From assembly GCF_001194135.2 (NCBI RefSeq), contig NC_069002.1, forward strand, positions 6,132,014 to 6,196,013: a stretch of 64,000 nt of DNA, given 5' to 3'. Position 1 is the stretch's first letter. Every line of letters starts with the position of its first letter. Positions 1,002-43,778 of this stretch are shown here, piece by piece. Origin of the DNA: Octopus bimaculoides (lineage: Eukaryota). The position numbers were made by a program, and so were the translations under genes. The notes under the pieces were generated by a model, which saw nothing but the letters and a program-made list of their open reading frames with translations, was not told where the DNA came from and searched no databases.

Positions 1002-1013
1002 CCTTCCCAATCA
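1002..1013 (-). CDS. unc-13: Candidate 12-nt microexon of unc-13 (CTGATTGGGAAG)
   Basis: long T tract, cctttcttcaactcgaaag|CTGATTGGGAAG|gtattt; weaker AAG acceptor; shares TGGGAAG|gta with the 7238-7246 candidate. Confidence 0.3.
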
Positions 1014-1303
1014 GCTTTCGAGTTGAAGAAAGGAAAAAAAAAAAAAAAAAGAGAAAGGCAAAAATTCAATATACATTAATTACATATCACCTGTAATGAA
1101 ATTAATTTAAAAACAAAACTGTCTTCGGTTGTACAAGTTTTCAAGTTTTCGTTTTAAATAAGTTTTCGAAATAAAATTCCAGAAACTTCAAACATTCTTT
1201 TGTTCTTTTTTGTTTTCTTTTTTGTCTCTTGATCGTGCAGTTATGTCACGAAACAGAGACTTTAATTAAGATACGTGTGCATAATATATATATATGTAAA
1301 ATG

Positions 1304-1336
<33 letters not shown>

Positions 1337-1788
1337 ATATTATAAATGTATGTGTATATGTATTTTGGTACATAAAATATATGCACATGCAATGTATACA
1401 CATGTGTGTATATTATATACGTATATATTTATATATATACATGTGTACATTTTATACATATGTATGCATATATATATGTGTGTGCATATGTGTATGCTTG
1501 TGTGTGTGTGTGTGTGTGTATACAAAGAAAGACAGATTTCAATTAGAAACATTAAAAAATATTATATATTACTACTATAGATAATATCATGATACATACA
1601 CAATTTGTGTGTGTGTGTGTATGTGTGTTTGTGTGTGTGCGTGTGTGTGTGTTCTTTATTTTTTTTAAATCAATAAAATTTAGGAATCACATTTGAAGAT
1701 TTTGATAAACATGGTTTCTTTAATAATAGAACTCAATATGTCCTATGAGGCAATTTTATACATTTCGGCTTGCCATATATATACTTAC

Positions 1789-1883
<95 letters not shown>

Positions 1884-2280
1884 CATAAACAAAATAAAAA
1901 TAAAACATTTTTAAATATGGTAAAAACTAGAAGTAAAAAAAAAAACCCAAATATTCCTGTGAGAATGTGATATAATCATTAACCATTGATTTTTGGTTTA
2001 AAAAAAAAAGAATGGCAATTAGCCAAAATAGTCTGAATTTAAAACAAAATTAAATATGATTTTTAAAAATTATTGCATGCTTCCTTGTACTAAGAATCAG
2101 TTGGATGTCTTTGAAACTTCAGACATTTACATAAATTCCTGTAGCCAAGTGATTTAGTCGGTCGAATGTTGTTCTTAACAATCAAAACACTCGTCATGAA
2201 AGATGTTAATTTTTAAGAAAGTTGACCCCAACCACACAGTAAACAAAATGTTGACAGTAAAAGATTTAAGAATTTTAAAT

Positions 2281-2680
2281 CATCATCATCATCATCATAA
2301 TCGTTTAACGTCTGCTTTCTATGCTGGCATGGGTTGGACAGTTTGACTGTGGTTTGGAGAGTCAACGGCTGCACCAGGCTCTAATTTGATCTGGTAATGT
2401 TTCTACAGCTGGATGCCCATCCTAATGCCAACCACTCCAAGAGTGTAGTGGCTGCTTTTTACTTTTACGTGCCACCAGCACAGGAGCCAGTCAGGCGGGC
2501 CTGGCATTGCTCACATTCAGATAGTGCTTTTTATGTGCCACCAACATGGGAGCCAGTCATGGGGTTCTGGCATTGCTCATGTTCAGATATGATAGTGCTT
2601 TTTATGTGCCACCAGCATGGGGACCAGTCAGGGGGTACTGGCATTGGCCACGTTTGGGTGGTGCTTTTTATGTGCCAGTG
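2281..2680 (-). mobile_element. RTE-type 3' end/SINE with (GAT)n tail and internal ~55-60 bp tandem repeats
   Basis: (cat)n cgtttaacgtctgctttctatgctggcatgggttggac...; 4 copies of gtgctttttatgtgccacca; other copies near 4755, 20000, 26970, 35515, 44780, 47040, 52440, 56125, 61735 (same orientation) and 24585, 27340, 50225 (opposite). Confidence 0.7.
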
Positions 2681-3458
2681 AATGCAATTATCTATCTATC
2701 TACATGTGTATGTGCGTGTGTGTGTATGTGTGTGCATGTGTTTGTTAAAACTAATACATTTTCTTTTATTCTTTTAGCTTCTTTCAGTTTCCATCTACCA
2801 AATCCCCTCACAAGGCTTTGGTCATCCTAGAAGACACTTGCCCAAAGTGCCAAGCAGTAGGACTGAACTCAGAGAAGCAAGCTTCTTATCACAGAGCCAT
2901 GTCTGCACAAAGGATGTAAACATCAGTGAGGAAAGCCAATAAAATGGTGTTGCTGTGATATTTATTCTGCACCAGGTTACAAACACTTCCTTGTCATACT
3001 CGGTGCTAAAAAATAAAATGCAGTCAACTGGTTTTAACTAATGTTCACCATTTATGATCTAAAATAAAACAAATCGGTAAACTACTAATTGTAACAGTAT
3101 ATGCCTAGTTACTAATGTGTCTCTGCATATACAGTTCTTATTCGGTTTTCTTACTTTTTCTTTTCTCTTTTTTTTTTTTCACAGTTTCACAACAACAAAA
3201 AAACAGAAGTATCAAAAAAATCTGTAGAATTCATTAGCAAATTTTGACCTTAATTACACTTTCTAAATTAATTAAGGACAAGTAAAAAGCCGAAATACAT
3301 AAAGCTTGCATCTAATAGGTGTATCGCATTACTCCTGAATAAAGTAACAATAAATAGAAAGAAATTCATGGTTATAATATCAATTAGCAATAGCAATTAG
3401 TAATATCAGTAATATAACAATCCTTAACAGCACATAACACTTAAATATTGCAATAATG

Positions 3459-3509
<51 letters not shown>

Positions 3510-3950
3510 TATAGATATATACACATATATACATATATATATACATATATATATATAGATATATACACATATATACATATATATATATACATATATATAC
3601 ATATATACATATATATATATACATATATATATACACATATATATATTAGAAGAAAGAGCATAAAAAAAGGTAATGAAATTCTCAAAATGTTATTTTGTTT
3701 TTATGCAAGAATTTACCAATAGGGAATATTAAGTAGAGACTTACACTTTCATTTACCTAATTATTTTAATTGAAAAGCAATAAAAACTAACATGGATGGA
3801 TAGATGGATGGACAGACAGACAGATGGAGTAGTCATATCAAATCTGACTTCTGGAACATTCATATCCACCAGTCTTTCCTAGGACATTACATGAGTGGTT
3901 TGCCTTTGCCAACATAAAGTGAACCTACTGCTTATGTATCTTTAGATGTT

Positions 3951-4184
3951 TCTTATTTCTTTATTGCCCACAAGGGGCTACATACAGAGGAGACAAACAA
4001 GGACAGATAAACAGATTAAGTCGATTATATCAACCCCAGTGCGTAACTGGTACTTATTTAATCAACCCCGAAAGGATGAAAGGCAAAGATGACCTCGGCG
4101 GAATTTGAGCTCAGAACTTAACGGCAGACAAAATACCGCTAAGCATTTCGCCCGGTGTGCTAACGTTTCTGCCAGCTCGCCACC
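3951..4184 (-). mobile_element. tRNA-derived SINE family B, near complete
   Basis: Reverse complement ggtggcgagctggcagaaacgttagcacaccgggcgaaatgcttagcgg...ttctgagctcaaattccgccgaggtc. Confidence 0.85.
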
Positions 4185-4984
4185 TGAATATAACAAAATT
4201 ATAATTATTAATGGCAATTCTCATACACACCCAACTGCATGAAAATTTCTTTAAATGAGACACAAAAAAAAAAGCATGACTTTCTCAAAATATTTTTCAT
4301 TTTGTGCTAAAATTTGCAGATATGGGATTTTTATTGTTTAAATTAAAAACAAAAATAAAAAACTAAGTTCGTTTACCCTTTGATCTTGCTAATTATTTTA
4401 ATTGCAAAGAGGTTAAGAGCCAATATAAAAATACAATAAAATGCTTTTTGTTGTTGCTGTTGTTGTTGTTGTTTTTAGTTCCAGTTTAGTCATGATCAAA
4501 CAGACCTAGCAGAAAATACATTCCATTTGTGACCATCCTGACATGTCATATTTTCAGGCAAAGTGTAACTTGAACTACATTGCCGAAAATGTCTTTTCTC
4601 CTTTGAAGATGGTGAGGCATCATTTAAAGGAGATTTAGCTGCTATTACTTGCAGGTTGAACAACCAACCATACAGAGGTTCCCTGATTGGCAATAAGATG
4701 CAGTCGTATTCTGATTTAATCAAATATTATAACATTCAATATTAACTGAACATTCATCATCATCATCATCATCATCATTTTAACATCCACTTTTCCATGC
4801 TGGCATGGGTTGGACAGAATTTGTCAAGGTGGTTTTTTTTTTCTATGGCTGGATGCCTTTCCTTCACCAACCTTCAACTGTTTTCCATGGAAAATTGACA
4901 ACAAAGAACAGAGCTTACATGAGGGTGACACTCATTTACAGCAACTGTCACGTGATATCAGGCCAAGGAGACAGTAATACATGA

Positions 4985-5520
4985 GATATCAATGAAGTGA
5001 TTGTTTAGTTTCAGAATGGCATTGTCAGGTAGGAGTGAGAGGTCAGATCTGGCTGATTTGAACATAAAACAAATAGAATATCTGGATTAGATAAGGCTAG
5101 TTTAACCTGTTAGCATTCTGATTAATCTGTCTATTGTAATGCTTATCTATTCACATTGTTTTGAATTAATCATGCACTGTCTTGTAGCTTTGAGATTTCA
5201 ATGATATATTTTTTAGAATGACATTGTATGGTAGGCATGAAAGGCCTGATCTGGTCAGTTTGAATACAAAACAAGTAGAATATCTGAGCCTGATGTGGCT
5301 AGTTTGACCCTTTGGCATTCAGATTACTCAGTCAAATGTAATGCATATTTATTCACATTGTCTAAATTAATCCCCCATTATCTCATAGCTTTCAAGATTT
5401 CAACAATGTGATTATTGATATTTAGAATAACATTGTAGGGTGGGTGTGAGAGGCCAGATAGGGTTGGTTTAAACATGAAACAAGTAAAATACTTCGGCCA
5501 GATATGGTCAGTTAAATTAC
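4985..5520 (+). mobile_element. About 2.5 tandem copies of a ~200-bp TTAA/CCC-type (piggyBac-like) MITE
   Basis: Units start ttaacctgttagcatt (5102) and ttgaccctttggcatt (~5304); reverse copy near 40975-41125. Confidence 0.6.
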
Positions 5521-5995
5521 TACAGCATTCTTTTTTTACCCTTTTTCATGATTCAGCCATTGGACTGTGACCCTGCTGGAGCACCGTACAGTAAATTTTC
5601 TTTTATATATATATATATACAGTGACTGGCTGTGGAGGTCCGGTAGAATAAAACAGGAACAAAAGGAGTTCGTAGGCAAAACATCATTGAGACCGACTAC
5701 TTTGGACTGCGTTGATAAAACACTTGCCGAGGAAGCTGCACATTAGAACCAAATGCATAACCATGCAACCATGCACGAATACTTCTTGTGTTGACATTTA
5801 AACTATGCAAAATTTTATAGTTTTACAAACAGTGTTGTTATATGAAGAGAGAGCTCCGACTGAATACACAAACTATCAAACGGCTTGACTGCAAGTGTTG
5901 ATATACTTTCAGAGCTAACATATAAACAATCTACTGAATAAATATCGAATGTAGCAAATTTACACAAGTAGTAGGATAAATATGCTTCTTTTTTT

Positions 5996-6050
<55 letters not shown>

Positions 6051-6152
6051 CATACATACATACATATATATATACATACACATTTATACATATATATACA
6101 TACACATACACACATGTACATACCGATGTATGCTAAAGCATCCCTATGTGTG

Positions 6153-6201
<49 letters not shown>

Positions 6202-7237
6202 CCACATACACATATATACAAACACATACATACCAATGTATGCCAATACATTGCTATACATATATATATATATATATACATACATACACTCACACACATA
6301 TATATGCGTATATAATGTGCATATATGTGCACATTAAAGAGCTGCACATGAACATGAAAGTGTAAACTGTTAAAAACTGTTAAAAGGTATCGAGACAGAT
6401 CTGGCAAAATATGTAAGTTATGGTTTCTATGAAAGCCTTCAATGGCAACATTGGTCACTCGTATATCAAAAGAATATGTAAAAGCTGTATTCATTAGCTT
6501 CTCACATCACAGCTCAGCAATCATCAGGAGTTCTTTGACTGTCAAAAATATATTGTTCTGACTTCAATGTCATACACTTTGCCACGTCATTGCTACATTA
6601 TGCTTTTTTTCCAGATATGAGTCACAGCTCAAATTCTCAGTGCTGTTGACAGTTAACACTTCGTTCTGAATTTCCTTCTGGCAAATTAGGGCTCTTTTTG
6701 CTTTGTTTTGTTTTGTTATGCTTTTTTTCTTTTCTTTGTTAAAGACAAAATTCTCAATAAATGAACTTGGTTTTTCTCTAATCTCTTCTACATAGTTAAG
6801 TGACTTTCGTTGGTTTGCTGTTCTTTTTATTTTTTACTGGGGGCATGACCTTGTAAACAAATCGACCCCAGTAAATATTTTTTCAAGTTTAGTACTTATT
6901 CAAAACGCTATTTCTTGCAGTAGTGAATCTTGGCTGAATTCTTTTGAATGTTTTACGACAAGAGTTTGTAAATTGAAGTTAAATGCCATTACATACATGT
7001 GCACAATGCGAGGAATTTTATACAAAACATCAAAGAGAAAATTGTTGATGTAGCATTATACTTGAGTATGAAAAACAAAAAGAGGGAAGAAGAATGGTGG
7101 GTAATAAAAAAAAAACATTCCTGATTTTAAGTAAAATAAATCTGGAGGGAACAAATTATATTATATCTGAGATTGCATTGTATTCAGGTAGATATGGTTT
7201 TATTTGAAAGAAAATATTAATAAAAATTTATAGTTAC

Positions 7238-7246
7238 CTTCCCAGT
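7238..7246 (-). CDS. unc-13: Candidate 9-nt microexon of unc-13 (ACTGGGAAG)
   Basis: ctgttttctttttttctttaatttgcag|ACTGGGAAG|gtaact; frame-preserving. Confidence 0.45.
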
Positions 7247-7323
7247 CTGCAAATTAAAGAAAAAAAAGAAAACAGATTTAGCATAAAAACTGATATAAAA
7301 CAAAGATATAATATAAAACACTC

Positions 7324-7358
<35 letters not shown>

Positions 7359-7362
7359 ACAC

Positions 7363-7406
<44 letters not shown>

Positions 7407-9690
7407 ACATATACATATATATATAAACACAAATATATATGTATATATAAACACACACACACATATATATATATATCTACAAACACAAATATAGAATGAA
7501 ACATAAAATACAGATATAGTACGAAATATGAAATATATATAACATAAAACACAGTACATAACAAAGAATATATTTTATTTAAGCATATGGTACAACCTGG
7601 TAGCCAGTTACTGTAAGAGAGATAATCATTTCAAGACAAATGTTGGGGAGATTGGAAATTTGACTTTTAAAATGAAGAACTTAATAGAATATATGTATCT
7701 TATTTTTATTTACAGACTCATTGTGAAGATGTAAATACTTCTAGTTATAGGTAATCACATCTAGCACCATTTCATTCTTGATGACCCAAGGCAAATAAAT
7801 TAAATGAATTTAAACATTTTACAAAGCAAGATATTTCTTACAGTGGAAAGCAATTTACAGTTTAGAGGACATTCATGATAAATTATACAATTAACATAAG
7901 AATAGATGTACAAGATATGAGAAGAATATATCAAATAAAACTATTTTCAAAATGCCAAAACATTAAAAATTGCCTAAAGGGATTTTCTTGAAAATTGGTA
8001 AGGCATAAAGAAAAATATGAAACTGATAATCTAAAAAGTTATTTAAATGTCCAAATGTTGAAATCAAGTTGTTAACAAGATTAGAATTTCTCAAACTATT
8101 CACCTCATTTTTAGAGATTAATGATGTTTGAATGCATCACATCTACATTCTATTCTGATCAGATTAATTTCTAATCATATTCCTGGATATGTACAAAGTA
8201 TGTGACTGGATTTAATCTAATTTAGAACTTAGTTTAGAAAATAAAGAAGATTGAAGATCAAACCAATACGAACATAGTGTACATATGAAATATTGCAAAA
8301 ATGGTTTCACTTCTAAAGATGAAATTGACAGTCTGAAGAATTATGATGTAAATGTATGGACATAGCTGCATGGTTAAGAAGCTCATTTTGCATCCATGAA
8401 ATTACAGGTTCAATACCTTGGGCAAGTGTTTTCTATTACAGCCCTGGTTAGACCAATGCCTTGGGAGTGAATTTGACTGATGGAAACTGTAAAACCACAG
8501 TGTGTGTGTCCCTTCTCCACCACCACTCGACTGTAGCACGTTTCTTCCCTCCATGCACCCCACCATACCAAACTGAGTGCAACTATAATAACCCCAATCC
8601 CAATCACATAACAACTATTTTGTTTTGCTACTTGTAGAAGATGTATTCTTTGCTCTCAGCACTGTAAAGAATTCTTTTCTTTTCAAGACATACTTTAATT
8701 CTAAGTTGCTAAATTAACAATATAAATACATTAGAAAGAATATACAAACTGCTTCGATTAGAATACGTAATTTCCTCAAAATCACAGCAATGTAATCCCA
8801 AATAAATGTCCAATTGCTATTTATTAAAATGCTTTGACATGCTTTTATTATTATTTCACTAACTGCAAGTGTAATCTTTAATTGAAGATTACCTCAATTA
8901 ATTCACAGCTTTTAATTAGAAAATATATCACACAGAGAGCTTGAATTAGTGTATTTCTTTCAATTAATTCAAATTAAAATAAATAGATAAGTTAAGAGAT
9001 GATGATTTTTACATCTTCGTTTTTAGTTTTGTTTTTATTTTTAGATATAAACCAATTTAAATTTTGTTCTGGTGTTTTGATATTGGATATTATTTTACTT
9101 TCATTTCGTAAGACACATAAATCAAAATGATTATCTAACTTCTGAACCTGTTTCCACCATAATATTTAATATATACATATAAACACACACATATATATTT
9201 ACACACAAACACACATACATTCATATGTACATACATACAAACGAAAGCATTAAATTGTGCCAGTATACATAGATTAAAATATATGTAAAAGACAGGAAAA
9301 AGAAAGGAAAAAATGCATAATGAAGAGCCAAAATGTAACAAGCAATGATATTTTAAAAATTACTGGAATAACAAAAGTAAAAAGTAACAAAAACAAAAGC
9401 TGCATTGACTCAGATCTTTACAAATATTATATACAGAAGCATACTTCAAATTTCAATTGAGGCTAAACATTTCTGAACATTCAAGTATTTGATAGCAGTA
9501 GCAACAACATGTAATTTAATCTAAGAATGGTCTTTTAACACAGTATTTACACCAGCCATAAATGTCTTAAATAATCCACTAATTTTATGCCAAAACTAGC
9601 CAGATTTAGTCTCTCCCACCTATCCCTAAGAAAACAAATTTGACAGATAATTTAAGAAAAAGTTCTGATTTAATTCGTGTGTTGAAGCAT

Positions 9691-9873
9691 ATTTTATTAT
9701 CTGGGGAGAACCATTCTCTTTTAGTGCCTTATTATTTAACTCACTCACCAGTTCAATTTCCATTCAATTGATTATTTATTCTTTCTAAATAAGTAAATGA
9801 ATGGAAATTGAACCAGTGAGTGTGTTAAGTAATAAGGCACTGAAAGCGAATGACTCCCCAGACACAATAAAAT
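9691..9873. repeat. Imperfect inverted repeat, ~85-bp arms, ~9-nt loop
   Basis: ctggggag...gtgccttattatttaactcactcac..gttcaatttccattca vs tgaatggaaattgaac..gtgagtgtgttaagtaataaggcac...ctccccag; single related arm near 57130-57215. Confidence 0.85.
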
Positions 9874-10359
9874 TCTGATTTAATATTATGATGGAAAATT
9901 TAAATCTAAACACTAAGGAACATTCTAAAAGAAGGCAAATTGCCATCGAAACCTTGTGTTCTCCCATTTTCGGATTTAGTAATTAAAGAATTTGTCTCCT
10001 GCTCAATAAGAACATTTGAGCAAACTGTGAATTCACATTTGCATTGGGTTGTTTACAATAACATTAAAGCGAAATTAAGAGATCTGACTTTCTCGCTTGA
10101 AACAACAAAGTCGAAGAATTTATCAACTTAGACAAAAGATTTGGTAAAATATATAAATTGAATTGCAATTCGGCTATAAATTAACATAATAATAATAATA
10201 GTAATAATGATAATAATAATGTTCACAATTTTGAAATATACTTCAGTAATGAAGAAAACAAATTAAAAGAAGATATTAAATAACAAACTGTAGATTAAAT
10301 GAGAAACATTTAACTCAAATGGAGGGATATTTCTCAAATGAATTCAAAGGATAACATCC

Positions 10360-10393
<34 letters not shown>

Positions 10394-10519
10394 TGTATGT
10401 GTGTGTGTGTGTATATGTATTTATATGCACACATACATATGTACCTACATACATACACACACACACACAGAACATTAACAATATATCAAAAATCCTGACT
10501 GTCAGCAATATAGCATTTG

Positions 10520-10556
<37 letters not shown>

Positions 10557-10842
10557 TGTCTGTGTATGCACACATATATGTATGCATGCTTATGTGAGTG
10601 TGCGCTTACGCATACATGCACACATATACATATAGATACACACACACATATATGCTGGTAAGCACAATACTTCAATATATGGACACGGCTGAGCTGTCAA
10701 CGACTAAACCAGCAATCCCATGAAACTATGCTTGGGAAGTCCAGTGATTCATCCTGGCTGGACAAAAAAACAAAACCAATCAGAGAATGACCACTATCGC
10801 AAATGAGTCAACAGCCATTCAGTAGTGTGCATGTGTGTATGT

Positions 10843-10882
<40 letters not shown>

Positions 10883-11312
10883 GTATGTGTGTATGATGTC
10901 TATTACATATCTTTTATCTTTTGAAAGCACTTGGCTCAGTGGTTAAAGCATTGTGCTCGCAATCATACATACAAAATCATACATTTTATACATATATGCA
11001 TGTAAGTATGTATGTATGTATGTATGTATGTATGTATGTATGTGGAAAACAGATAGAGAAGATGGAAGAGAGGAGGAGAAGGAAAGATAATCAATATACA
11101 ATACTTTAACACTTCATTCCTTCTTCTGCCGCACATCAAACTGATAGTTCACAGCTTGTTTAAATATGCATTTAATAAAATCCAAGAAACAGAAAAATTA
11201 CATCGAAGATAGCAGAGCTCTTCCAAAATGTATATTGGTTTCTCTGCATTTTTATCTGTATTTATTATTTATAGTTGTAGCAGTAGTTGTTGTCATAAGC
11301 ATGCTCTCTTTC

Positions 11313-11343
<31 letters not shown>

Positions 11344-11568
11344 TATACATATATATATAGGCCTTAAACTTGCATGAGTATGTGTGTGTACACACATTTG
11401 TATGTATATATATATATATATATATATATACATTTATGTAGTATGTATATATTTATGTAGTATGTATATACACACACACACACATATATGAATAATAAAT
11501 ATTTATATGCATATATATATTTATAAATATATATATAATTTTAATAAATATCTATATGTGTATATGTA

Positions 11569-11609
<41 letters not shown>

Positions 11610-11651
11610 GTATATACATATATACATATATACATATATATATACATATAC

Positions 11652-11699
<48 letters not shown>

Positions 11700-11825
11700 A
11701 TATAGTAAATCCAAAAACAGAAGACAAACAAAAAAAACAACAATGCAAGGACGTGGTACATGTAAAATATTAGGAATGTATATACATGCATGAATGCGTA
11801 TTTGTGTATATATAATTCATATGTA

Positions 11826-11839
<14 letters not shown>

Positions 11840-11857
<18 letters not shown>

Positions 11858-11864
11858 CAAAAAT

Positions 11865-11899
<35 letters not shown>

Positions 11900-11937
11900 C
11901 AAAAATAATATATATATATATATATACATACAAAAAT

Positions 11938-11980
<43 letters not shown>

Positions 11981-12020
11981 CATACAAAAATAATAATATA
12001 TATATATATATATACATATA
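11840..12020. repeat. Higher-order microsatellite: (TA)n-tacaaaaataataa, about 4 units
   Basis: Directly visible; embedded in the 11300-12040 TA/TG field. Confidence 0.85.
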
Positions 12021-12110
12021 TGTATATATGTATACATATGAATTACTTAAGCACTCTACATATCAATAATGAAAGCATAAAGCAGTGACTAAAGGCAAAT
12101 TGATGCCTAC

Positions 12111-12119
12111 CTTCATATC
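12111..12119 (-). CDS. unc-13: Candidate 9-nt microexon of unc-13 (GATATGAAG)
   Basis: tttttttcccattttctttttcatgttttcttacacag|GATATGAAG|gtaggc; frame-preserving, no stop in any phase. Confidence 0.4.
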
Positions 12120-12492
12120 CTGTGTAAGAAAACATGAAAAAGAAAATGGGAAAAAAAATTAACAATGTTAGACATTTCATGAAACAAATAAAATGCACAA
12201 TTTGGATTAAACATTACAAAGTGCGTTCTGCTCCAACACACACACACAGAGCCACGCACGCAAGCACGTACATAGAAGAACTATCATTGGAACCACTGTC
12301 ATCACCATTGCCATCGACAGCAACATTAATGAGCAGCAACAGCATCTCGCAAATATTTGTTGTTTGACATTCTTGTGCTGCGTTCCTTTCAGCAATTATC
12401 GAACTGAAGGAAAAAATTTATCCAAACATCTATGCATTCAGAAATGAAACAACAATAATAATAATACTTATGGTAATAATAAGAATAATAAT

Positions 12493-18084: not shown

Positions 18085-18230
18085 ATGGTTCTCAACCAGG
18101 GTCCACATGGCCCCTGAGCGTTTGTATAAGATTTTTGGGGGTCCAAGCAGCAAAATAGTAAATTGGAGATCCACAATAGTATTTTGAGGGCTCCTGAAAA
18201 AATTTTGCTTTCGATGTTTATGGAGAAAAG
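18085..18230 (+). mobile_element. hAT-like MITE end
   Basis: caatggttctcaaccagggtcc; related termini at 46616 (cagtgcttcttaaactatgggtc) and 56565-56582 (gttgagaaccatcg). Confidence 0.45.
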
Positions 18231-18285: not shown

Positions 18286-18409
18286 CATAGGGAAGTTCAA
18301 ATCGGGCATCAATAAGAATGCTGTGACCAGTGGAGCCTCGAGTTCCAATAATTTCCCCATTCTTCATGATCAATTCACCATCCAAGGAAAACCATTTGCC
18401 CTGGCCTTC
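18286..18409 (-). CDS. unc-13: Unc-13/Munc13 C2A C-terminal exon (homologous to vertebrate UNC13 exon 5)
   Basis: ctttttatag|GAAGGCC...CCCTATG|gtaagt; 124 nt, phase 0 to 1; EGQGKWFSLDGELIMKNGEIIGTRGSTGHSILIDARFELPY vs recalled UNC13B [41 protein letters not shown]. Confidence 0.93.
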
Positions 18410-19289
18410 CTATAAAAAGTAAAAAAAGAAAAAAATTTGGAAAAGTTAATTTTTTTATCAATGGGAATCATATAGAAATGAAAAAAAAAAAAGGCATCTG
18501 TGTACAGATAAATTTTTTCACAAATTATAGTGTATCTTACAATGCATTGTTCATCCATGCTTTTTAATTGAACTGAATTAAGCTTCGTAAGTGTTTGACT
18601 GAAAGAAGATTAGCAGTCTAAATAGATGACAGCTAAAAGTAGACTTGATCGATGTCTATGCCAAATGCATGAGTAAAATTTGCTTATGACTAAATAAATT
18701 ATTATTCAAACAATAAACATGATTATGAAAAAGAGGGTGAACAAAGGGAAATACTTATAGAAAATATTGCATAGAATTTGAGAAGTGTTTTCAACATCTT
18801 TCAATGATGGCAGGCGAATCAAACCTACCACAGTTCATTGTAGGATATAAAAAATATGACTGCTTGCATATCGGGAAATTTGTAAGTTCAGTTTTTTTAA
18901 AATTTCATTAATTTTTTTTTAGTATCACCACTATAGGTATTTGCACCCCGGTGAAATCAAGAAATCAACTCGTAAATAAATGAAACCTTCAAATCGACCA
19001 CTGCAGACACACACGTACACACTAGAGAGGGAGAGAGAGAGAGACAGACAGAAAGACAAAGAAGGAGAGGGGGAGACAGATAAATGCATGTACATCAAAT
19101 ATATGTATCTATGTATGTGTGTATGTATATATATAAAACAATAATAAATGAGTATATGCATATATACGTACAGGTATGTGCATACCTACGTCTACCTGTA
19201 TATATAGGTGCATATCTGGGTACAGGACATTGCAAACAAAACGTAGACAAGAAAATAATAATAATAATCAGAGTACAGAAAACACACAA

Positions 19290-23460: not shown

Positions 23461-24547
23461 CAGGCTTTCAATTTTTTCTATCAAATCCATTCACAGGCCT
23501 AAAGTAGAAGATACCTTCCCAAGGTTCCACATAGTGGCACTGAACCTGAAACCATGTGGTTGGGAAGCAAACATCTTAACCACACAGCTACACCTGTGTG
23601 TATAACGACAACAACAAAAAAAGAAAAAAGATGGGATGGCCATAGCTGGAATCCCTTTGATCATCAGCCTCCCCCACCCCATGACTAACCTAGGGTTAAA
23701 TAACGTCTTTTAATGTTAACTCCCTGTCAGCTTTGTACTTTATTTCAATATAGATTGGTTCAAGTTTCCTTTGAAGTAAATATACGCCACCACCTTTTGA
23801 ACTCTGCTACAAGAAACCAATAAAAACCAATGTGGAACACAAGCATTATGGATATCTTGAAGAAAATCTTAATTCCTTGATTTCGTGTCCTAGATACTTT
23901 TTTTCCTTCTCTTTTACCGATTTTTTTGTTTTTTAATTTTTTGTTAATGTTCCTCTCCACAAAAACCATTCTATAAAAAATGTCCAGACCACACTTCCAT
24001 CCAAACCTAAGGTTGTGTGAAACAATGAGGGGAACCTGTACTTGGTCACTGAACCTGCTAGAAATAGCAGTAAAATATCCATCAAATTGTACCCTGCCTC
24101 TGAAAAAATGAGCGTTTATATTAAATACTGTAGTTCTATATACCCAGAATAAACTGCTTAGCAGCATTTCTTTCGAATGTTTACATTCTGAGTTCAAATC
24201 TTGCTGAGGTCAACTTTCTCTTTCATAGCTTTGGATTTGTTCAACTAAACCCTTCAAGGAAGTGCCCCACTATGGCCACAGTCTAATGACTGGAACAAGT
24301 AAAAACAAAACAAGGTGTGGGTGCTTATTAAATTTAATGTTAAAAAAAACGTTGAATTAAGGATTAAAAGTTGTNNNNNNNNNNNNNNNNNNNNNNNNNN
24401 NNNNNNNNNNNNNNNNNNNNNNNNNNNNNNNNNNNNNNNNNNNNNNNNNNNNNNNNNNNNNNNNNNNNNNNNNNNNNNNNNNNNNNATATATATATATAT
24501 ATATAACAATTGTAGTGATTAATAAAAATTCTCATATCTTTCATTTA

Positions 24548-33307: not shown

Positions 33308-34678
33308 GTAAGAGAGTTAGGGGTTGAGGATTCAACCCACTAAGGGATAGTATCTATCAAATATACTGCTGGGAGGGTGCCCAATTATTGTTACACTAGT
33401 GTTATACCAAGTGTAATAAGTGGGTGCGGGTAAAAGGGGGGTTATTTTACCCTAAATTTATATAGCAATAAGAAAATGGAGGAGAATATGTGGTATCCAT
33501 CGACTTGCAGACAGTGTATTCCGTTGAATTAATCAATTTATTTTGTAACTAAAATGACAAAAACCACAATATACAGATGCTTATGACATACCATGTCATA
33601 TTAACAATCGANNNNNNNNNNATATATATATATATAATATTTATCCAGACCATGAAATTATAGGTGTGGATTATATTTCTGACTGCCAAGTCTCAGCTGC
33701 TCAAAAGAAAGGAATTATTTTTACCTATTTTTAAAATAGCATTATCTCTGACTGACTGATCTTTGTACCTTACTGCAATTATGGTCGATGGCTAACTTCT
33801 GAGAGATTAGTGTACAGTACATTCTTATGATGGAAACGTTTAAATATTTTATATTGGTGGTTGCTTTTTAGTTTTTGCAATATAATTGGACGTTTTTAGG
33901 ATCTAGCCTCACTTAGTAGCCTGTATCGCATTACAACGTTTAAGCTGATCACTAACGAGTTTTATAAATAATATATTATCCACTTATCTTTGGTAACAAA
34001 ATTCCTCTGACAATAATTGTAAAATTATTGTTTTCACATGCATGCATATAAACCTAAATTGCATATTTTCTCTACTAATGCAGTCCAGTATTTGCCATTT
34101 GATACAGGATAATGACACGGCAGTAGATGCGGGGAGTGACTGCACAAACTGATTGATTTGGTAGTGTGCAGTTCAGAGTTTGGAATATGACATAGCGTTT
34201 TATCTTTCTCCAAAGACAACGAAATAAGTCGCTGCTTCAATAAATGGTAAAAAAATATGACTAGTAAATTGATGTGGCTGCACCAAGCAGTCAATCAAAT
34301 TTGTATTGGTCCAAAGCTATGCTCCATGGGTACAAAAGGGTCTCTATCTCCTCTCCTTCAGTGAGGTGTATGAGTGTGAGTATGTATGTGTATATATATG
34401 TGTGTGTGCGTGTGTGTGTGTATATATGTGTGTGTGTGCATGATTGTGTGTATGCATATGTGTGTGTCTTTGTGTTTGTCTCCCGCCAGAGCTTGACAGC
34501 TGGTGTTGGTGTGTTTATGTCCCCGTAACTTAGCGATTCAGAACATGGGGCCAATAGAATAATTACCAAGCTTAAAAGAAGAAAAAAGTAGTGAGGGGGA
34601 GGGTCAATTCCTACAGCTAAAACTTTGCGAGGCAATGCCCCAGTATGGCTGCAGCTGAATGATGGAAACAAGTAAAAG

Positions 34679-36160: not shown

Positions 36161-37913
36161 CATCCATAGTAGAGGGCACTGTTCCAATGTGCTACGCAGT
36201 AGGACCAAACCCGGAACCATATTTTGAAAACAGCGAGATGGGAGAATTATTATTAGCATGTCGGACGAAAAGCTGAGCTGCATCCCTTTCAGCTGTTTAC
36301 ATTCTGAGTTCAAATTCCACTAAGGTCAACTTCACCTTTCATCCCTCCTGGGCGTCAATAGAATAAAGTAACAGTTANNNNNNNNNNNNNNNNNNNNNNN
36401 NNNNNNNNNNNNNNNNNNNNNNNNNNNNNNNNNNNNNNNNNNNNNNNNNNNNNNNNNNNNNNNNNNNNNNNNNNNNNNNNNNNNNNNNNNNNNNNNNNNN
36501 NNNNNNNNNNNNNNNNNNNNNNNNNNNNNNNNNNNNNNNNNNNNNNNNNNNNNNNNNNNNNNNNNNNNNNNNNNNNNNNNNNNNNNNNNNNNNNNNNNNN
36601 NNNNNNNNNNNNNNNNNNNNNNNNNNNNNNNNNNNNNNNNNNNNNNNNNNNNNNNNNNNNNNNNNNNNNNNNNNNNNNNNNNNNNNNNNNNNNNNNNNNN
36701 NNNNNNNNNNNNNNNNNNNNNNNNNNNNNNNNNNNNNNNNNNNNNNNNNNNNNNNNNNNNNNNNNNNNNNNNNNNNNNNNNNNNNNNNNNNNNNNNNNNN
36801 NNNNNNNNNNNNNNNNNNNNNNNNNNNNNNNNNNNNNNNNNNNNNNNNNNNNNNNNNNNNNNNNNNNNNNNNNNNNNNNNNNNNNNNNNNNNNNNNNNNN
36901 NNNNNNNNNNNNNNNNNNNNNNNNNNNNNAAAAAAAAAAAAAAAAACGAAAGAAAGACAAGAAAAAAAATAGAAACAAAGAGTTGTAGATTGTAGACAAG
37001 TATATTAGCTGCGAAAATACTGTGAAAGCCTTTCTTTCTTTCCCTTCAATATCGATAAAAGAGCTAATATCAAGAAAATGGTAATTCAAAAGTTTGACAA
37101 TGAAGTTAACATCATTTAAACATATTTCCTGGAAATGTCACAGAGATATATTATTTCATTACTAAATGTCAGTGCCACAAATAGGTTAAAACGTATATCA
37201 AATAGTTTCTATACTACATAAGGCGTGGCTGTTCTGTTAAGAAATTCGCTTCCCAACCACATGGTTCCGGGGTTCAGTCCCACTGCATGGGACATTGGAA
37301 GGGTATCTCCTGCTACAGCCTGCAGGCCAACCAAAGCTTTGTGAGTGGATTTGGTAGATGGAAACTGAAAGAAGCCTGTCATAAGGTACCCCTTGAAGAA
37401 TTTCTGTCGAATGAATCAACCAAACTACATGTGTTTTTGATGTTTGGTACTTATTCTATCTATTTCTTTTGCCAAACTGCTAGGTTATGGGGCTGTAAAA
37501 AAACACACCAACGCTGGTTGCCAAGCTTCAGTATTTTCTCTATTTTTCTTTTGATGTTTGTCTTTCTGTCTATCTGTTTCTGTGTCTGTCTGACCCTGTG
37601 CCTGTCTAGCTGTCTATCTCTGTCTGTCTGTCTTTGTCTGTCTATCTGAATGTGTGTCTGAATCTGTGTGTGTGTGTCTCTCTCTCTCTCTCACACACAC
37701 TTGGTCTCTTTCTCTCTCTCTAATGGTACTAAACAGATAAATTTATCCATTCAGCACCATTAGTAAACCTCACTCTCTGATGAAAACGCACAGCCAGAAA
37801 CGCAAGACTTTTCCTCTTCTTTCTTCCTTCCTCGCGACAAACCAATTCATTTCATTTCTCTTTCTTTCCCTTTTCTCTTCCTCCTGCACCCCCACCCTTC
37901 CCCATATCATATA

Positions 37914-39459: not shown

Positions 39460-40184
39460 NNNNNNNNNNNNNNNNNNNNNNNNNNNNNNNNNNNNNNNNN
39501 NNNNNNNNNNNNNNNNNNNNNNNNNNNNNNNNNNNNNNNNNNNNNNNNNNNNNNNNNNNNNNNNNNNNNNNNNNNNNNNNNNNNNNNNNNNNNNNNNNNN
39601 NNNNNNNNNNNNNNNNNNNNNNNNNNNNNNNNNNNNNNNNNNNNNNNNNNNNNNNNNNNNNNNNNNNNNNNNNNNNNNNNNNNNNNNNNNNNNNNNNNNN
39701 NNNNNNNNNNNNNNNNNNNNNNNNNNNNNNNNNNNNNNNNNNNNNNNNNNNNNNNNNNNNNNNNNNNNNNNNNNNNNNNNNNNNNNNNNNNNNNNNNNNN
39801 NNNNNNNNNNNNNNNNNNNNNNNNNNNNNNNNNNNNNNNNNNNNNNNNNNNNNNNNNNNNNNNNNNNNNNNNNNNNNNNNNNNNNNNNNNNNNNNNNNNN
39901 NNNNNNNNNNNNNNNNNNNNNNNNNNNNNNNNNNNNNNNNNNNNNNNNNNNNNNNNNNNNNNNNNNNNNNNNNNNNNNNNNNNNNNNNNNNNNNNNNNNN
40001 NNNNNNNNNNNNNNNNNNNNNNNNNNNNNNNCATTTGATACATCTATATCACTCAATCTCTCTCTCTCTCTCTCTACATATATATATATATATATGGGAG
40101 AATTTATGAAAAAAACAACAGACTAGGACAGGTGGTGTAAACAACAAAAGGATGTATTAGTTTAACGCTCGGGAATACAGAAAG

Positions 40185-43553: not shown

Positions 43554-43778
43554 TGATGATGGTGATGGTTTCAAATTTTGCCACAAGGGCAGAAATTTTG
43601 GGGGGAAGGGATGAGTCGATTANNNNNNNNNNCCCCCCCAGTTTTTATCTGGTACTTATTTTGTTGAGCCCCCTGAAAGGATGAAAGGCAAAGTTGACCT
43701 CGGCGGAATTTGAACTCAGAATGTAGCAATGGGTGAAATACCGCTAAGCATTTCGTCCAGCATGCTAACCATTTGTCC

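What the first reader, a model, noticed from the sequence alone, without database searches (positions are those of the whole stretch)
1002..12119. Cluster of GAAG-ending 9-12 nt microexon candidates downstream of the Unc-13 C2A domain
Seen: three frame-preserving micro-segments on the unc-13 sense strand (12111-12119 GATATGAAG, 7238-7246 ACTGGGAAG, 1002-1013 CTGATTGGGAAG). Each follows a long pyrimidine tract and ends in GAAG|gta. Read in phase 1 after a G they give GYE, DWE and ADWE; in phase 0 they give DMK, TGK and LIGK. Known: 3-27 nt neural microexons are enriched in vesicle-trafficking genes, and the linker after Munc13 C2A is alternatively spliced in vertebrates. Inference: a microexon cassette tuning the synaptic priming factor, of a size standard annotation would miss.
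Basis: partly seen in the sequence, partly recalled or inferred. Interest (0 to 1): 0.75.

Follow-up and report, generated by a model that had tools for sequence, protein, structure and literature searches.

The report
Three real microexons in octopus unc-13
Three tiny exons of 9, 9 and 12 bases, each separated by 5-6 kb of intron, are spliced one after another into the mRNA of the synaptic priming gene unc-13, adding ten residues (GYEDWEADWE) where the rat protein starts the helix that grips its partner RIM; they look constitutive, not switchable.

Summary
The gene is on the minus strand. In 9 RNA runs the contig covering the last C2A exon (18286-18409) continues with exactly GATATGAAG|ACTGGGAAG|CTGATTGGGAAG. 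These are the three candidates, in genomic order. Two further runs show part of the join. The 11 runs come from 6 studies and 2 species. Each segment occurs only once in the 18-kb downstream region with AG...GT flanks (chance expectation 2e-4 to 8e-7). A partly spliced contig links microexon 2 physically to its own downstream intron.

The product reads ...RFELPY-GYE-DWE-ADWE-A... By ungapped alignment to PDB 2CJS these residues correspond to rat DIPEEEAR, the start of the post-C2A helix that binds the RIM zinc finger.

No skipping form appears in any contig, so the "alternative cassette" reading is unsupported, though contigs hide minor isoforms. Other molluscs encode this stretch in one ordinary exon, so the split looks lineage-specific.

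A by-product is a likely short isoform. It reads through the donor of microexon 2 and ends 20-23 nt after an AATAAA (6826-6831).

Verdict: real microexons, a new member of a known kind, moderately interesting.

The parts
18286..18409 (-). Last exon of the Unc13 C2A domain (EGQGKWFSLDGELIMKNGEIIGTRGSTGHSILIDARFELPY + G). It ends in phase 1; the donor is ATG|GTAAGT.
   Evidence: Covered by one RNA contig in each of 11 runs with 0 mismatches. Aligns to rat Munc13-1 C2A in PDB 2CJS/2CJT, E = 2.4e-28.
12111..12119 (-). Microexon 1, 9 nt, GATATGAAG. It completes G|GA TAT GAA G, giving Gly-Tyr-Glu.
   Evidence: Joined directly to 18286 in RNA contigs of X1-4, X6, X9, X12, X13, X15 and X18, and partly in X5. 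It is the only AG..GT-flanked copy in the window. Unchanged in organism C DNA.
12120..12160 (-). Acceptor region of microexon 1: ttttttttcccattttctttttcatgttttcttacag-type pyrimidine tract, CTTAC at -9, no nearby UGC.
7238..7246 (-). Microexon 2, 9 nt, ACTGGGAAG. It gives Asp-Trp-Glu; this Glu aligns with rat E137.
   Evidence: Joined between microexons 1 and 3 in RNA contigs. The X15 and X17 contigs run from its downstream intron through it into microexon 1 plus the C2A exon. No substitutions across 7210-7265 in organisms C and D.
7247..7275 (-). Acceptor region of microexon 2: ctgttttcttttttttctttaatTTGCag, with a UGC at -5 between the pyrimidine tract and the AG.
   Evidence: A UGC in this position is typical of SRRM3/4-dependent microexons (bioRxiv 10.1101/2024.09.17.613571).
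1003..1014 (-). Microexon 3, 12 nt, CTGATTGGGAAG. It gives Ala-Asp-Trp-Glu. The next exon starts with C, so the next codon is GCN (Ala).
   Evidence: RNA contigs. Unique in the window. No substitutions across 967-1081 in organism C.
1015..1062 (-). Acceptor region of microexon 3: a T-rich tract of about 30 nt, followed by an unusual 19-nt spacer (cctttcttcaactcgaaag) before the AG.
6803..7237 (-). Intron sequence kept in an RNA species in which C2A exon, microexon 1 and microexon 2 are already joined. It is the likely 3'UTR of a short isoform. The frame reads DWE-GNYKFLLIFSFK-stop. An AATAAA lies at 6831-6826 and the contigs end at 6803 and 6806.
   Evidence: X15 (465 nt, depth 293) and X17 (462 nt, depth 206) contigs. 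The stretch is fully held by X15-17 and partly by X46, X9, X50, X51 and X47. Absent from X13 and X18 contigs.
56918..57017 (-). Upstream C2A exon ((E)[32 protein letters not shown]), 100 nt.
   Evidence: tblastn and direct reading. Aligns to 2CJS/2CJT.

Best explanation
The window holds the 5' part of a cephalopod unc-13 (Munc13-1-like, C2A-containing) gene on the minus strand. After the last C2A exon (18286-18409) come three microexons: 12111-12119 (9 nt), 7238-7246 (9 nt) and 1003-1014 (12 nt). They are separated by introns of 6166, 4864 and 6223 nt. All are phase 1 to phase 1 and all end in GAAG|GTA. They are spliced in series into the main mRNA, giving ...RFELPY-GYE-DWE-ADWE-A...

Shown:
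- The three segments are in the mRNA, in this order, in two species and six studies.
- No skipped form reaches contig level.

Inferred:
- The ten residues replace the short acidic stretch (D + 7-11 residues) that other animals encode at the start of one ordinary exon. They would then form the beginning of the alpha-helical extension after C2A, which in rat Munc13-1 wraps, together with the bottom of C2A, around the RIM zinc finger. By ungapped alignment the Glu of microexon 2 matches rat E137, one of two residues whose charge reversal abolishes RIM binding.
- Recognition of such small exons across 5-6 kb introns probably relies on the long pyrimidine tracts, the AAG|GTA donors, the purine-rich GAAG exon ends and, for microexon 2, a UGC at -5.
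- Microexons 2 and 3 probably arose by duplication.
- The donor of microexon 2 competes with an intronic poly(A) site about 430 nt downstream, which yields a minor C2A-only transcript.
For: RNA:
- The loose end before 18285 reads GCTTCCCAATCAG|CTTCCCAGT|CTTCATAT in X9, X12 and X13, X1 and X18 and X2, X3 and X4.
- Organism B run X6 shows all three, plus a synonymous TAT>TAC. X5 shows microexon 1.
- X15 shows microexons 1 and 2 and then branches.

Mapping: there is one unique, collinear, AG..GT-flanked decomposition, with expectations of 2e-4, 4e-5 and 8e-7.

Physical link to the genome: an X15 contig covers 6900-7248 with 0 mismatches and then continues into microexon 1 plus the C2A exon.

Frame: the composite of 154 nt translates without a stop to ...ELPYGYEDWEADWE + G.

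Identity and position: 2CJS_A, E = 2.4e-28, with ELPYGYEDWEAD aligned ungapped to ELPLDIPEEEAR. The E128K/E137K mutant abolishes RIM ZF binding (PMC5436228). The C-terminal helical extension wraps the RIM ZF (PMC1472246).

Comparison:
- Lottia has a single exon encoding D(VVAD)LPEAEAAELQNKLSVLNIMDQE, 4.6 kb downstream of its C2A exon.
- Sinanodonta and Biomphalaria models read the same way.
- 72 of 97 C2A proteins continue with D/E, and none has GYEDWEADWE.

Duplication hint: microexons 2 and 3 share TGGGAAG plus 23 of the first 30 intron nt (background P = 0.0065).

Poly(A) isoform.
Against: - Contigs, not reads, were available. They suppress minor isoforms, so 'constitutive' is only 'dominant in these libraries'.
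- Tissue identity of the runs is hidden.
- The exon after microexon 3 lies outside the window, so it is not shown that an ELQxKLExLN-type helix follows.
- The alignment of the microexon residues to rat 132-139 is ungapped and short, so the E137 equivalence is tentative.
- The peptide shows no amphipathic signal above shuffles (hydrophobic moment P = 0.5).
- Conservation around the microexons in organisms C and D is not longer than expected at 3% divergence.
- The poly(A) site rests on contig ends in one study plus partial word matches in others. No poly(A) tail was seen.
- The similarity between microexons 2 and 3 is in AT-rich sequence.
Confidence: 0.8

Rival explanations
1. The three microexons are alternatively spliced cassettes, neural or neuron-subtype specific, whose combinatorial inclusion tunes the length of the post-C2A helix and so RIM binding and priming.
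For: - Each is frame-preserving (phase 1 to 1), so any subset could be skipped without breaking the frame.
- Microexon 2 has the UGC at -5 typical of regulated microexons.
- Another unc-13 microexon is switched between neuron types in C. elegans (PMC12287369).
- Helix-less C2A isoforms are annotated in Daphnia, deer UNC13B and a catfish.
- The X9 and X12 contigs stop 14 nt beyond microexon 3, which could be a branch point.
Against: - No contig in 11 runs from 6 studies joins the C2A exon to anything but microexon 1, or skips microexon 2 or 3.
- The only branch seen is intron read-through after microexon 2.
- Microexons 1 and 3 lack a proximal UGC.
Confidence: 0.2
2. The X15/X17 read-through contigs are not a polyadenylated short isoform. 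They are nascent or partly processed pre-mRNA in which the intron between microexons 2 and 3 is removed last, captured by a nuclear or 3'-primed library.
For: - X15 also holds other intronic sequence of this gene (700-937, depth 27).
- No poly(A) loose end was reported at 6803 or 6806.
- The bulk runs X13 and X18 have no contig there.
Against: - Two samples end within 3 nt of each other, 20-23 nt after an AATAAA, with no genomic A-run at that point to prime from.
- Depth over this stretch (293 and 206) is about ten times that of the other intron piece (27).
- There is zero coverage just beyond it (6745-6800) and in the introns around microexon 1.
- Runs from four other studies hold 17-53% of its words.
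Confidence: 0.3
3. The 30 nt come from an assembly artefact, or from a paralogous or retro-copied transcript, and their match to these three intronic sites is a coincidence.
For: Only assembled contigs were seen, and the microexons are far shorter than the assembler's 31-nt word.
Against: - The sequence is identical in independent assemblies of 9 runs and 2 species.
- The flanking exon matches the window at 127 of 127 nt.
- There is one unique collinear AG..GT mapping, with a joint chance far below 1e-10.
- A contig joins microexon 2 to 338 nt of its own intron.
Confidence: 0.01

Closest known systems
Neural microexons of MUN-domain genes: the 9-nt 'VLK' exon of C. elegans/Drosophila unc-13, the 6-nt exon at the same position in mammalian Unc13c, and the 6-nt nSR100-dependent exon of mouse Unc13b (PMC12287369; PMC4387716)
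   Same: Same gene family. Exons of 6-12 nt, frame-preserving, lying in regulatory N-terminal regions, each inserting 2-4 residues.
   Different: - Position: the known ones lie between the CaM-binding and C1 domains or elsewhere, while these lie directly after C2A.
- Number: the known ones are single exons, while these are three in a row.
- Regulation: the known ones are switch-like alternative exons, while no skipping was detected here.
Runs of consecutive microexons: human RPS24 (3, 18 and 22 nt; PMC12686416) and plant microexon clusters, which are mostly constitutive and often misannotated (PMC8831610)
   Same: Several very small internal exons in series, separated by normal introns, that are hard for aligners and annotators. 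The plant clusters are largely constitutive and encode parts of conserved domains.
   Different: Different genes and lineages. The RPS24 microexons are alternative and affect the C-terminus and 3'UTR. Here the introns are 5-6 kb each, and each exon encodes one x-aromatic-Glu unit.
Rat Munc13-1 C2A plus C-terminal alpha-helical extension bound to the RIM2alpha zinc finger (PDB 2CJS; PMC1472246; PMC5436228)
   Same: The C2A sequence is clearly homologous (E = 2.4e-28). FELP with the E128 equivalent is conserved. The microexon residues occupy the aligned positions of rat 132-141 (DIPEEEARYW), are likewise acidic with aromatic residues, and include a Glu aligned to E137.
   Different: The sequence is not conserved (GYEDWEADWE against DIPEEEARYW). 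In rat, Lottia and other animals this stretch starts an ordinary exon. RIM binding by the octopus protein is untested.

Membership tests
Microexon (internal exon of 3-27 nt) | Length of 27 nt or less, with canonical AG acceptor and GT donor | tested here: met
   9, 9 and 12 nt. All have AG and GTA flanks.
Microexon (internal exon of 3-27 nt) | Present in processed mRNA, joined to its neighbouring exons | tested here: met
   The contig sequence C2A|ME1|ME2|ME3|C... is seen in 9 runs, with partial support in 2 more.
Microexon (internal exon of 3-27 nt) | Preserves the reading frame | tested here: met
   All are multiples of 3 and phase 1 to 1. The composite ORF is open.
Regulated neural (SRRM3/4 / Srrm234 eMIC-type) alternative microexon | Alternative inclusion: a skipped isoform exists | tested here: inconclusive
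   No skipping contig in 11 runs, but contigs drop minor forms.
Regulated neural (SRRM3/4 / Srrm234 eMIC-type) alternative microexon | UGC motif between the branch point / pyrimidine tract and the AG | tested here: inconclusive
   ME2 has UGC at -5. The nearest UGC is at -78 for ME1 and -46 for ME3. The motif is present in about 75-79% of dependent exons and is not strictly required.
Regulated neural (SRRM3/4 / Srrm234 eMIC-type) alternative microexon | Neural-enriched inclusion and dependence on the eMIC regulator | not testable with these tools
   Run tissues are coded, and no perturbation data are available.
Unc13/Munc13 long isoform with N-terminal C2A domain | C2A domain homologous to Munc13-1 residues 1-128 | tested here: met
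   phmmer against PDB: 2CJS_A at 2.4e-28 and 2CJT_A at 1.7e-26. 812 homologues in the representative library.
Unc13/Munc13 long isoform with N-terminal C2A domain | Post-C2A alpha-helical extension that contributes to RIM zinc-finger binding | tested here: inconclusive
   The residues align positionally to rat 132-139. The next exon is not available, no structure prediction was allowed, and there is no amphipathic signal.
The conserved unc-13 'VLK' microexon (between CaM and C1) | Located between the CaM-binding site and the C1 domain, encoding VLK or a similar tripeptide | tested here: not met
   These exons directly follow C2A and encode GYE/DWE/ADWE.

The most novel reading that the evidence does not exclude
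The triple microexon is a cephalopod (or octopod) innovation. Serial duplication of the 5' end of the ancestral helix exon (G|AC TTG CCA GAA G... in Lottia, against G|AC TGG GAA G and G|CT GAT TGG GAA G here) built a repeat of x-Trp/Tyr-Glu units, one per microexon, that lengthens and re-shapes the RIM-binding helix of Unc13. In addition, the weak point of this chain is the donor of microexon 2, which competes with an intronic poly(A) site. That competition is used to make a C2A-only protein (ending ...GYEDWE-GNYKFLLIFSFK), which could act as a decoy for RIM or for C2A homodimerisation and so set priming strength.
Probability: 0.15. Interest if true: 0.7.

Novelty: new member of a known kind. 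Interest (0 to 1): 0.5.

Why it matters
Unc13 is the core vesicle-priming factor. Its C2A domain and the helix after it form the switch between an autoinhibited homodimer and the active RIM heterodimer.

In an octopus the first ten residues of that segment are built from three separately spliced 9-12-nt exons across 17 kb. This gives three things:
- A clean natural test case for how spliceosomes define consecutive microexons across long introns.
- A lineage-specific change in a well-characterised protein interface, which can be tested by binding assays.
- A concrete warning for annotation and RNA-seq alignment of cephalopod genomes, since a 30-nt insert made of three pieces is invisible to standard aligners.

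It is not a new kind of biology. If the exons are constitutive, as the data suggest, the regulatory interest falls.

Tried and rejected
- Protein database searches with the exon peptide returned only the window's own read-through ORF. A longer query gave short C2A-only models from other invertebrates.
- I first suspected that those truncated models meant hidden microexons in other phyla, and rejected this. The G after ELP[YF] is simply read-through of the GT donor (18 of 97 models). Lottia has an ordinary next exon.
- A motif scan of 10 kb downstream in Lottia and Aplysia for microexon-like AG..GT sites encoding acidic/aromatic peptides found none.
- RNA runs for the Aplysia locus could not be requested.
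- Conservation test against organisms C and D: no substitutions in any microexon or splice site. But the substitution-free intervals (at least 79, 56 and 115 nt) are not longer than expected at 3% divergence, so the test is uninformative.
- The amphipathic-helix idea (Y2, W5 and W9 on one face) was rejected as unsupported: the hydrophobic moment equals the shuffle mean, P = 0.5.
- Attempts to fetch DNA beyond the window start through ORF look-ups failed, because the source genome is not in that collection. The exon after microexon 3 is therefore unknown.
- A tblastn hit 'LLCVGLK' at 63235-63255 was rejected as a first exon because a stop follows it.

Full report
**1. What is in the sequence**

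The gene runs on the minus strand. The exon at 18286-18409 translates in frame 0 to EGQGKWFSLDGELIMKNGEIIGTRGSTGHSILIDARFELPY. It ends with one extra G, so it is phase 1, before a GTAAGT donor.

In the sense orientation the three candidates read as follows:
- ...ttttcttacacag|GATATGAAG|gtaggc (12111-12119)
- ...ttctttaatttgcag|ACTGGGAAG|gtaact (7238-7246)
- ...cctttcttcaactcgaaag|CTGATTGGGAAG|gtattt (1003-1014)

Everything else in the description is correct.

A mechanical scan shows that such sites are not rare:
- The minus strand has 61 frame-preserving AG..GTR candidates with at least 70% pyrimidines upstream.
- Sixteen of them lie in the 18 kb below the C2A exon, and 12 of those are open in phase 1.
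- Only these three end in GAAG|GTA, and the plus strand has none.

**2. RNA evidence**

Public RNA runs hold the C2A exon. I laid their contigs on the exon.
- The contig that covers 18286-18409 with no mismatch continues, on the + strand, as G|CTTCCCAATCAG|CTTCCCAGT|CTTCATAT(C). This is seen in X9, X12 and X13, X1 and X18 and X2, X3 and X4.
- Reverse-complemented, that is C2A-exon|GATATGAAG|ACTGGGAAG|CTGATTGGGAAG|C...
- A second species (organism B) shows the same three segments in X6, together with a synonymous TAT>TAC in the last C2A codon. X5 shows the start of the first segment.

The 30 nt can be cut into AG..GT-flanked genomic pieces in only one way. That way is the three candidates in genomic order. 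The expected chance occurrences in the 18-kb region are 2e-4, 4e-5 and 8e-7.

In X15 one contig matches 6900-7248 exactly. That span is the downstream intron plus microexon 2. The contig then continues into TCATATC|CATAGGGAAGTT, which is microexon 1 plus the C2A exon. This ties the spliced segment physically to this locus.

The composite of 154 nt is open and reads ...RFELPY-GYE-DWE-ADWE plus G. The next exon begins with C, so the next residue is Ala. The introns are 6166, 4864 and 6223 nt.

**3. Alternative or constitutive?**

Every run had a single contig across the C2A exon's 3' junction. None joined it to anything other than microexon 1, and none skipped microexon 2 or 3.

The only branch is in X15, whose exon contig stops exactly at the boundary between microexons 2 and 3. 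The other arm of that branch is the read-through into the intron, not a skipped form.

Contigs suppress minor variants and tissue labels are hidden. The defensible statement is therefore that inclusion of all three is the dominant form in six studies.

**4. Gene identity and where the residues fall**

The window's C2A exons are 56918-57017 and 18286-18409. They match rat Munc13-1 C2A in PDB 2CJS and 2CJT, with E = 2.4e-28 and 1.7e-26.

In the 2CJS alignment, ELPYGYEDWEAD pairs ungapped with ELPLDIPEEEAR. 2CJS is the complex of Munc13-1 residues 3-150 with the RIM2alpha zinc finger.
- Camacho et al. show that E128K, in C2A, together with E137K, in the following helix, abolishes RIM binding (PMC5436228).
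- Counting from the alignment, E128 is the conserved E of FELP, and E137 pairs with the Glu of microexon 2.

This placement is an inference from a short alignment. A hydrophobic-moment test gave no support for an amphipathic helix (P = 0.5).

**5. Comparison with other animals**

A scan of 1.8 billion representative proteins with a tick C2A protein gave 812 homologues. Of the 97 fetched proteins with the FELPx motif:
- 72 continue with D/E.
- Invertebrates read D + 7-11 acidic residues + ELQxKLExLN..MDQE.
- Vertebrates read DIPEEEARYW.KKLEQLN.
- None contains GYEDWEADWE.

Mollusc models read DVVADLPESEAAELQNKL (Sinanodonta) and DLPESEAAELQDKL (Biomphalaria).

In the Lottia genome this stretch starts one ordinary exon, 4.6 kb downstream of the C2A exon. 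That exon has two in-frame acceptors 12 nt apart...G|AT GTT GTT GCA G|AC TTG CCA GAA GCT GAG....

So the phase-1 intron after ELP[YF] is ancient. Eighteen models from many phyla simply read through its GT and give a Gly. The division of the following residues into three microexons is not the general molluscan state.

Microexons 2 and 3 share TGGGAAG and 23 of the first 30 intron bases (background P = 0.0065). Both resemble the start of the Lottia exon. Duplication is plausible but not proven.

**6. Known unc-13 microexons**

The literature describes three (PMC12287369):
- a 9-nt VLK exon between the CaM and C1 regions in worm and fly
- a 6-nt exon at that same position in mammalian Unc13c
- a 6-nt Unc13b exon

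None lies directly after C2A. Only one paper in the library mentions both octopus and microexons, and the passages I retrieved by searching it for 'octopus' and 'microexons' did not mention unc-13. Consecutive microexons are known in RPS24 and in plant microexon clusters. Whether the reference annotation of this genome already carries the three exons could not be checked.

**7. How the exons may be recognised (inference)**

- Each has a pyrimidine tract with 83% Y.
- Each has an AAG|GTA donor matching 6-7 of the 9 consensus positions.
- Each has a purine-rich GAAG end.
- Microexon 2 has a UGC at -5, the position typical of SRRM3/4-dependent microexons. Microexons 1 and 3 do not.
- Microexon 3 has an unusually long spacer between the pyrimidine tract and the AG.

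**8. A short transcript**

X15 and X17 are two samples of study P5. Each holds a contig of about 460 nt, at depth 293 and 206. The contig starts in the C2A exon, passes through microexons 1 and 2, reads through the donor of microexon 2, and ends at 6803 or 6806. That end is 20-23 nt after an AATAAA at 6831-6826.
- There is no coverage at 6745-6800.
- No genomic A-run lies at the end point.
- These runs have no coverage of the introns around microexon 1, so they are not DNA.
- Runs from four further studies hold 17-53% of the stretch. The bulk runs X13 and X18 hold none of it.

The frame gives ...DWE-GNYKFLLIFSFK-stop. I read this as a probable intronic-polyadenylation isoform that encodes a C2A-only protein. 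The rival reading is late-spliced nascent RNA.

**9. Verdict**

The regulatory 'cassette' reading is not supported by what could be tested. The finding is a new member of a known kind, made more interesting by its position at a well-studied protein interface and by the serial arrangement of the exons.

Noticed in passing
window 6803-7237 (minus strand); AATAAA at 6826-6831: Abundant RNA contigs in X15 and X17 join C2A exon, microexon 1 and microexon 2 and then read through into the intron, ending 20-23 nt after a poly(A) signal. This is probably a short C2A-only isoform (...DWE-GNYKFLLIFSFK-stop). Four other studies hold it in part.
   Followed up: partly
window 18410-56917 (N runs at 24375-24486, 33612-33621, 36378-36929, 39460-40031, 43623-43632, 53579-54023): The C2A exon that precedes 18409 in the mRNA ends ...TTCCACTTCGAAAAATTCACCATTCTAATCAG, encoding ...PLRKIHHSNQ. 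It is absent from the window; not even 12-mers of it match. It probably sits in one of the assembly gaps.
   Followed up: partly
L001:20898-20978 (Lottia gigantea KB200521.1): The Lottia helix exon has two in-frame AG acceptors 12 nt apart, giving D-VVAD-LPE... or D-LPE... The long form matches the Sinanodonta model and the short form matches the Biomphalaria model, which suggests a conserved tandem-acceptor choice in molluscs.
   Followed up: no
proteins P0002, P0003, P0007-P0009, P0028, P0032, P0033, P0041, P0059 and others: Eighteen of 97 C2A-bearing gene models from many phyla read 'FELP[YF]G...' followed by unrelated sequence, that is, they run through the GT donor. The phase-1 intron is therefore ancient and a frequent point of model truncation. 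The Lottia model (P0002) stops there although a normal next exon lies 4.6 kb further on.
   Followed up: partly
proteins P0147 (Daphnia sinensis), P0060/P0166 (muntjac; white-tailed deer UNC13B isoform X5), P0161 (catfish): These models join C2A directly to the downstream SEDSDYTS / DDRDSDY region with an Ala at the junction. They lack the post-C2A helix altogether, which would be a possible RIM-binding-deficient isoform in other animals.
   Followed up: no
window 18150-18191 and 18500-18549: Short segments flanking the C2A exon are covered at very high depth (up to about 800) by many different RNA contigs with 1-2 mismatches. They are copies of an expressed dispersed repeat, not part of unc-13.
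   Followed up: no
window 18287: Organism B differs from the window by one synonymous change (TAT>TAC, Tyr) in the last full codon of the C2A exon. Its three microexons are identical to those of the window.
   Followed up: yes
window 5009-5403 and 2463-2677: There is a 202-nt unit repeated twice (77% match) and a 66-nt unit repeated 3.2 times inside the intron between microexons 2 and 3.
   Followed up: no
window 1015-1062: The acceptor of microexon 3 has a run of 17 T (in the sense orientation) followed by a 19-nt purine-containing spacer before the AG. This architecture is unusual for a constitutive exon and resembles the long branch-point-to-AG distance described for regulated microexons.
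   Followed up: no
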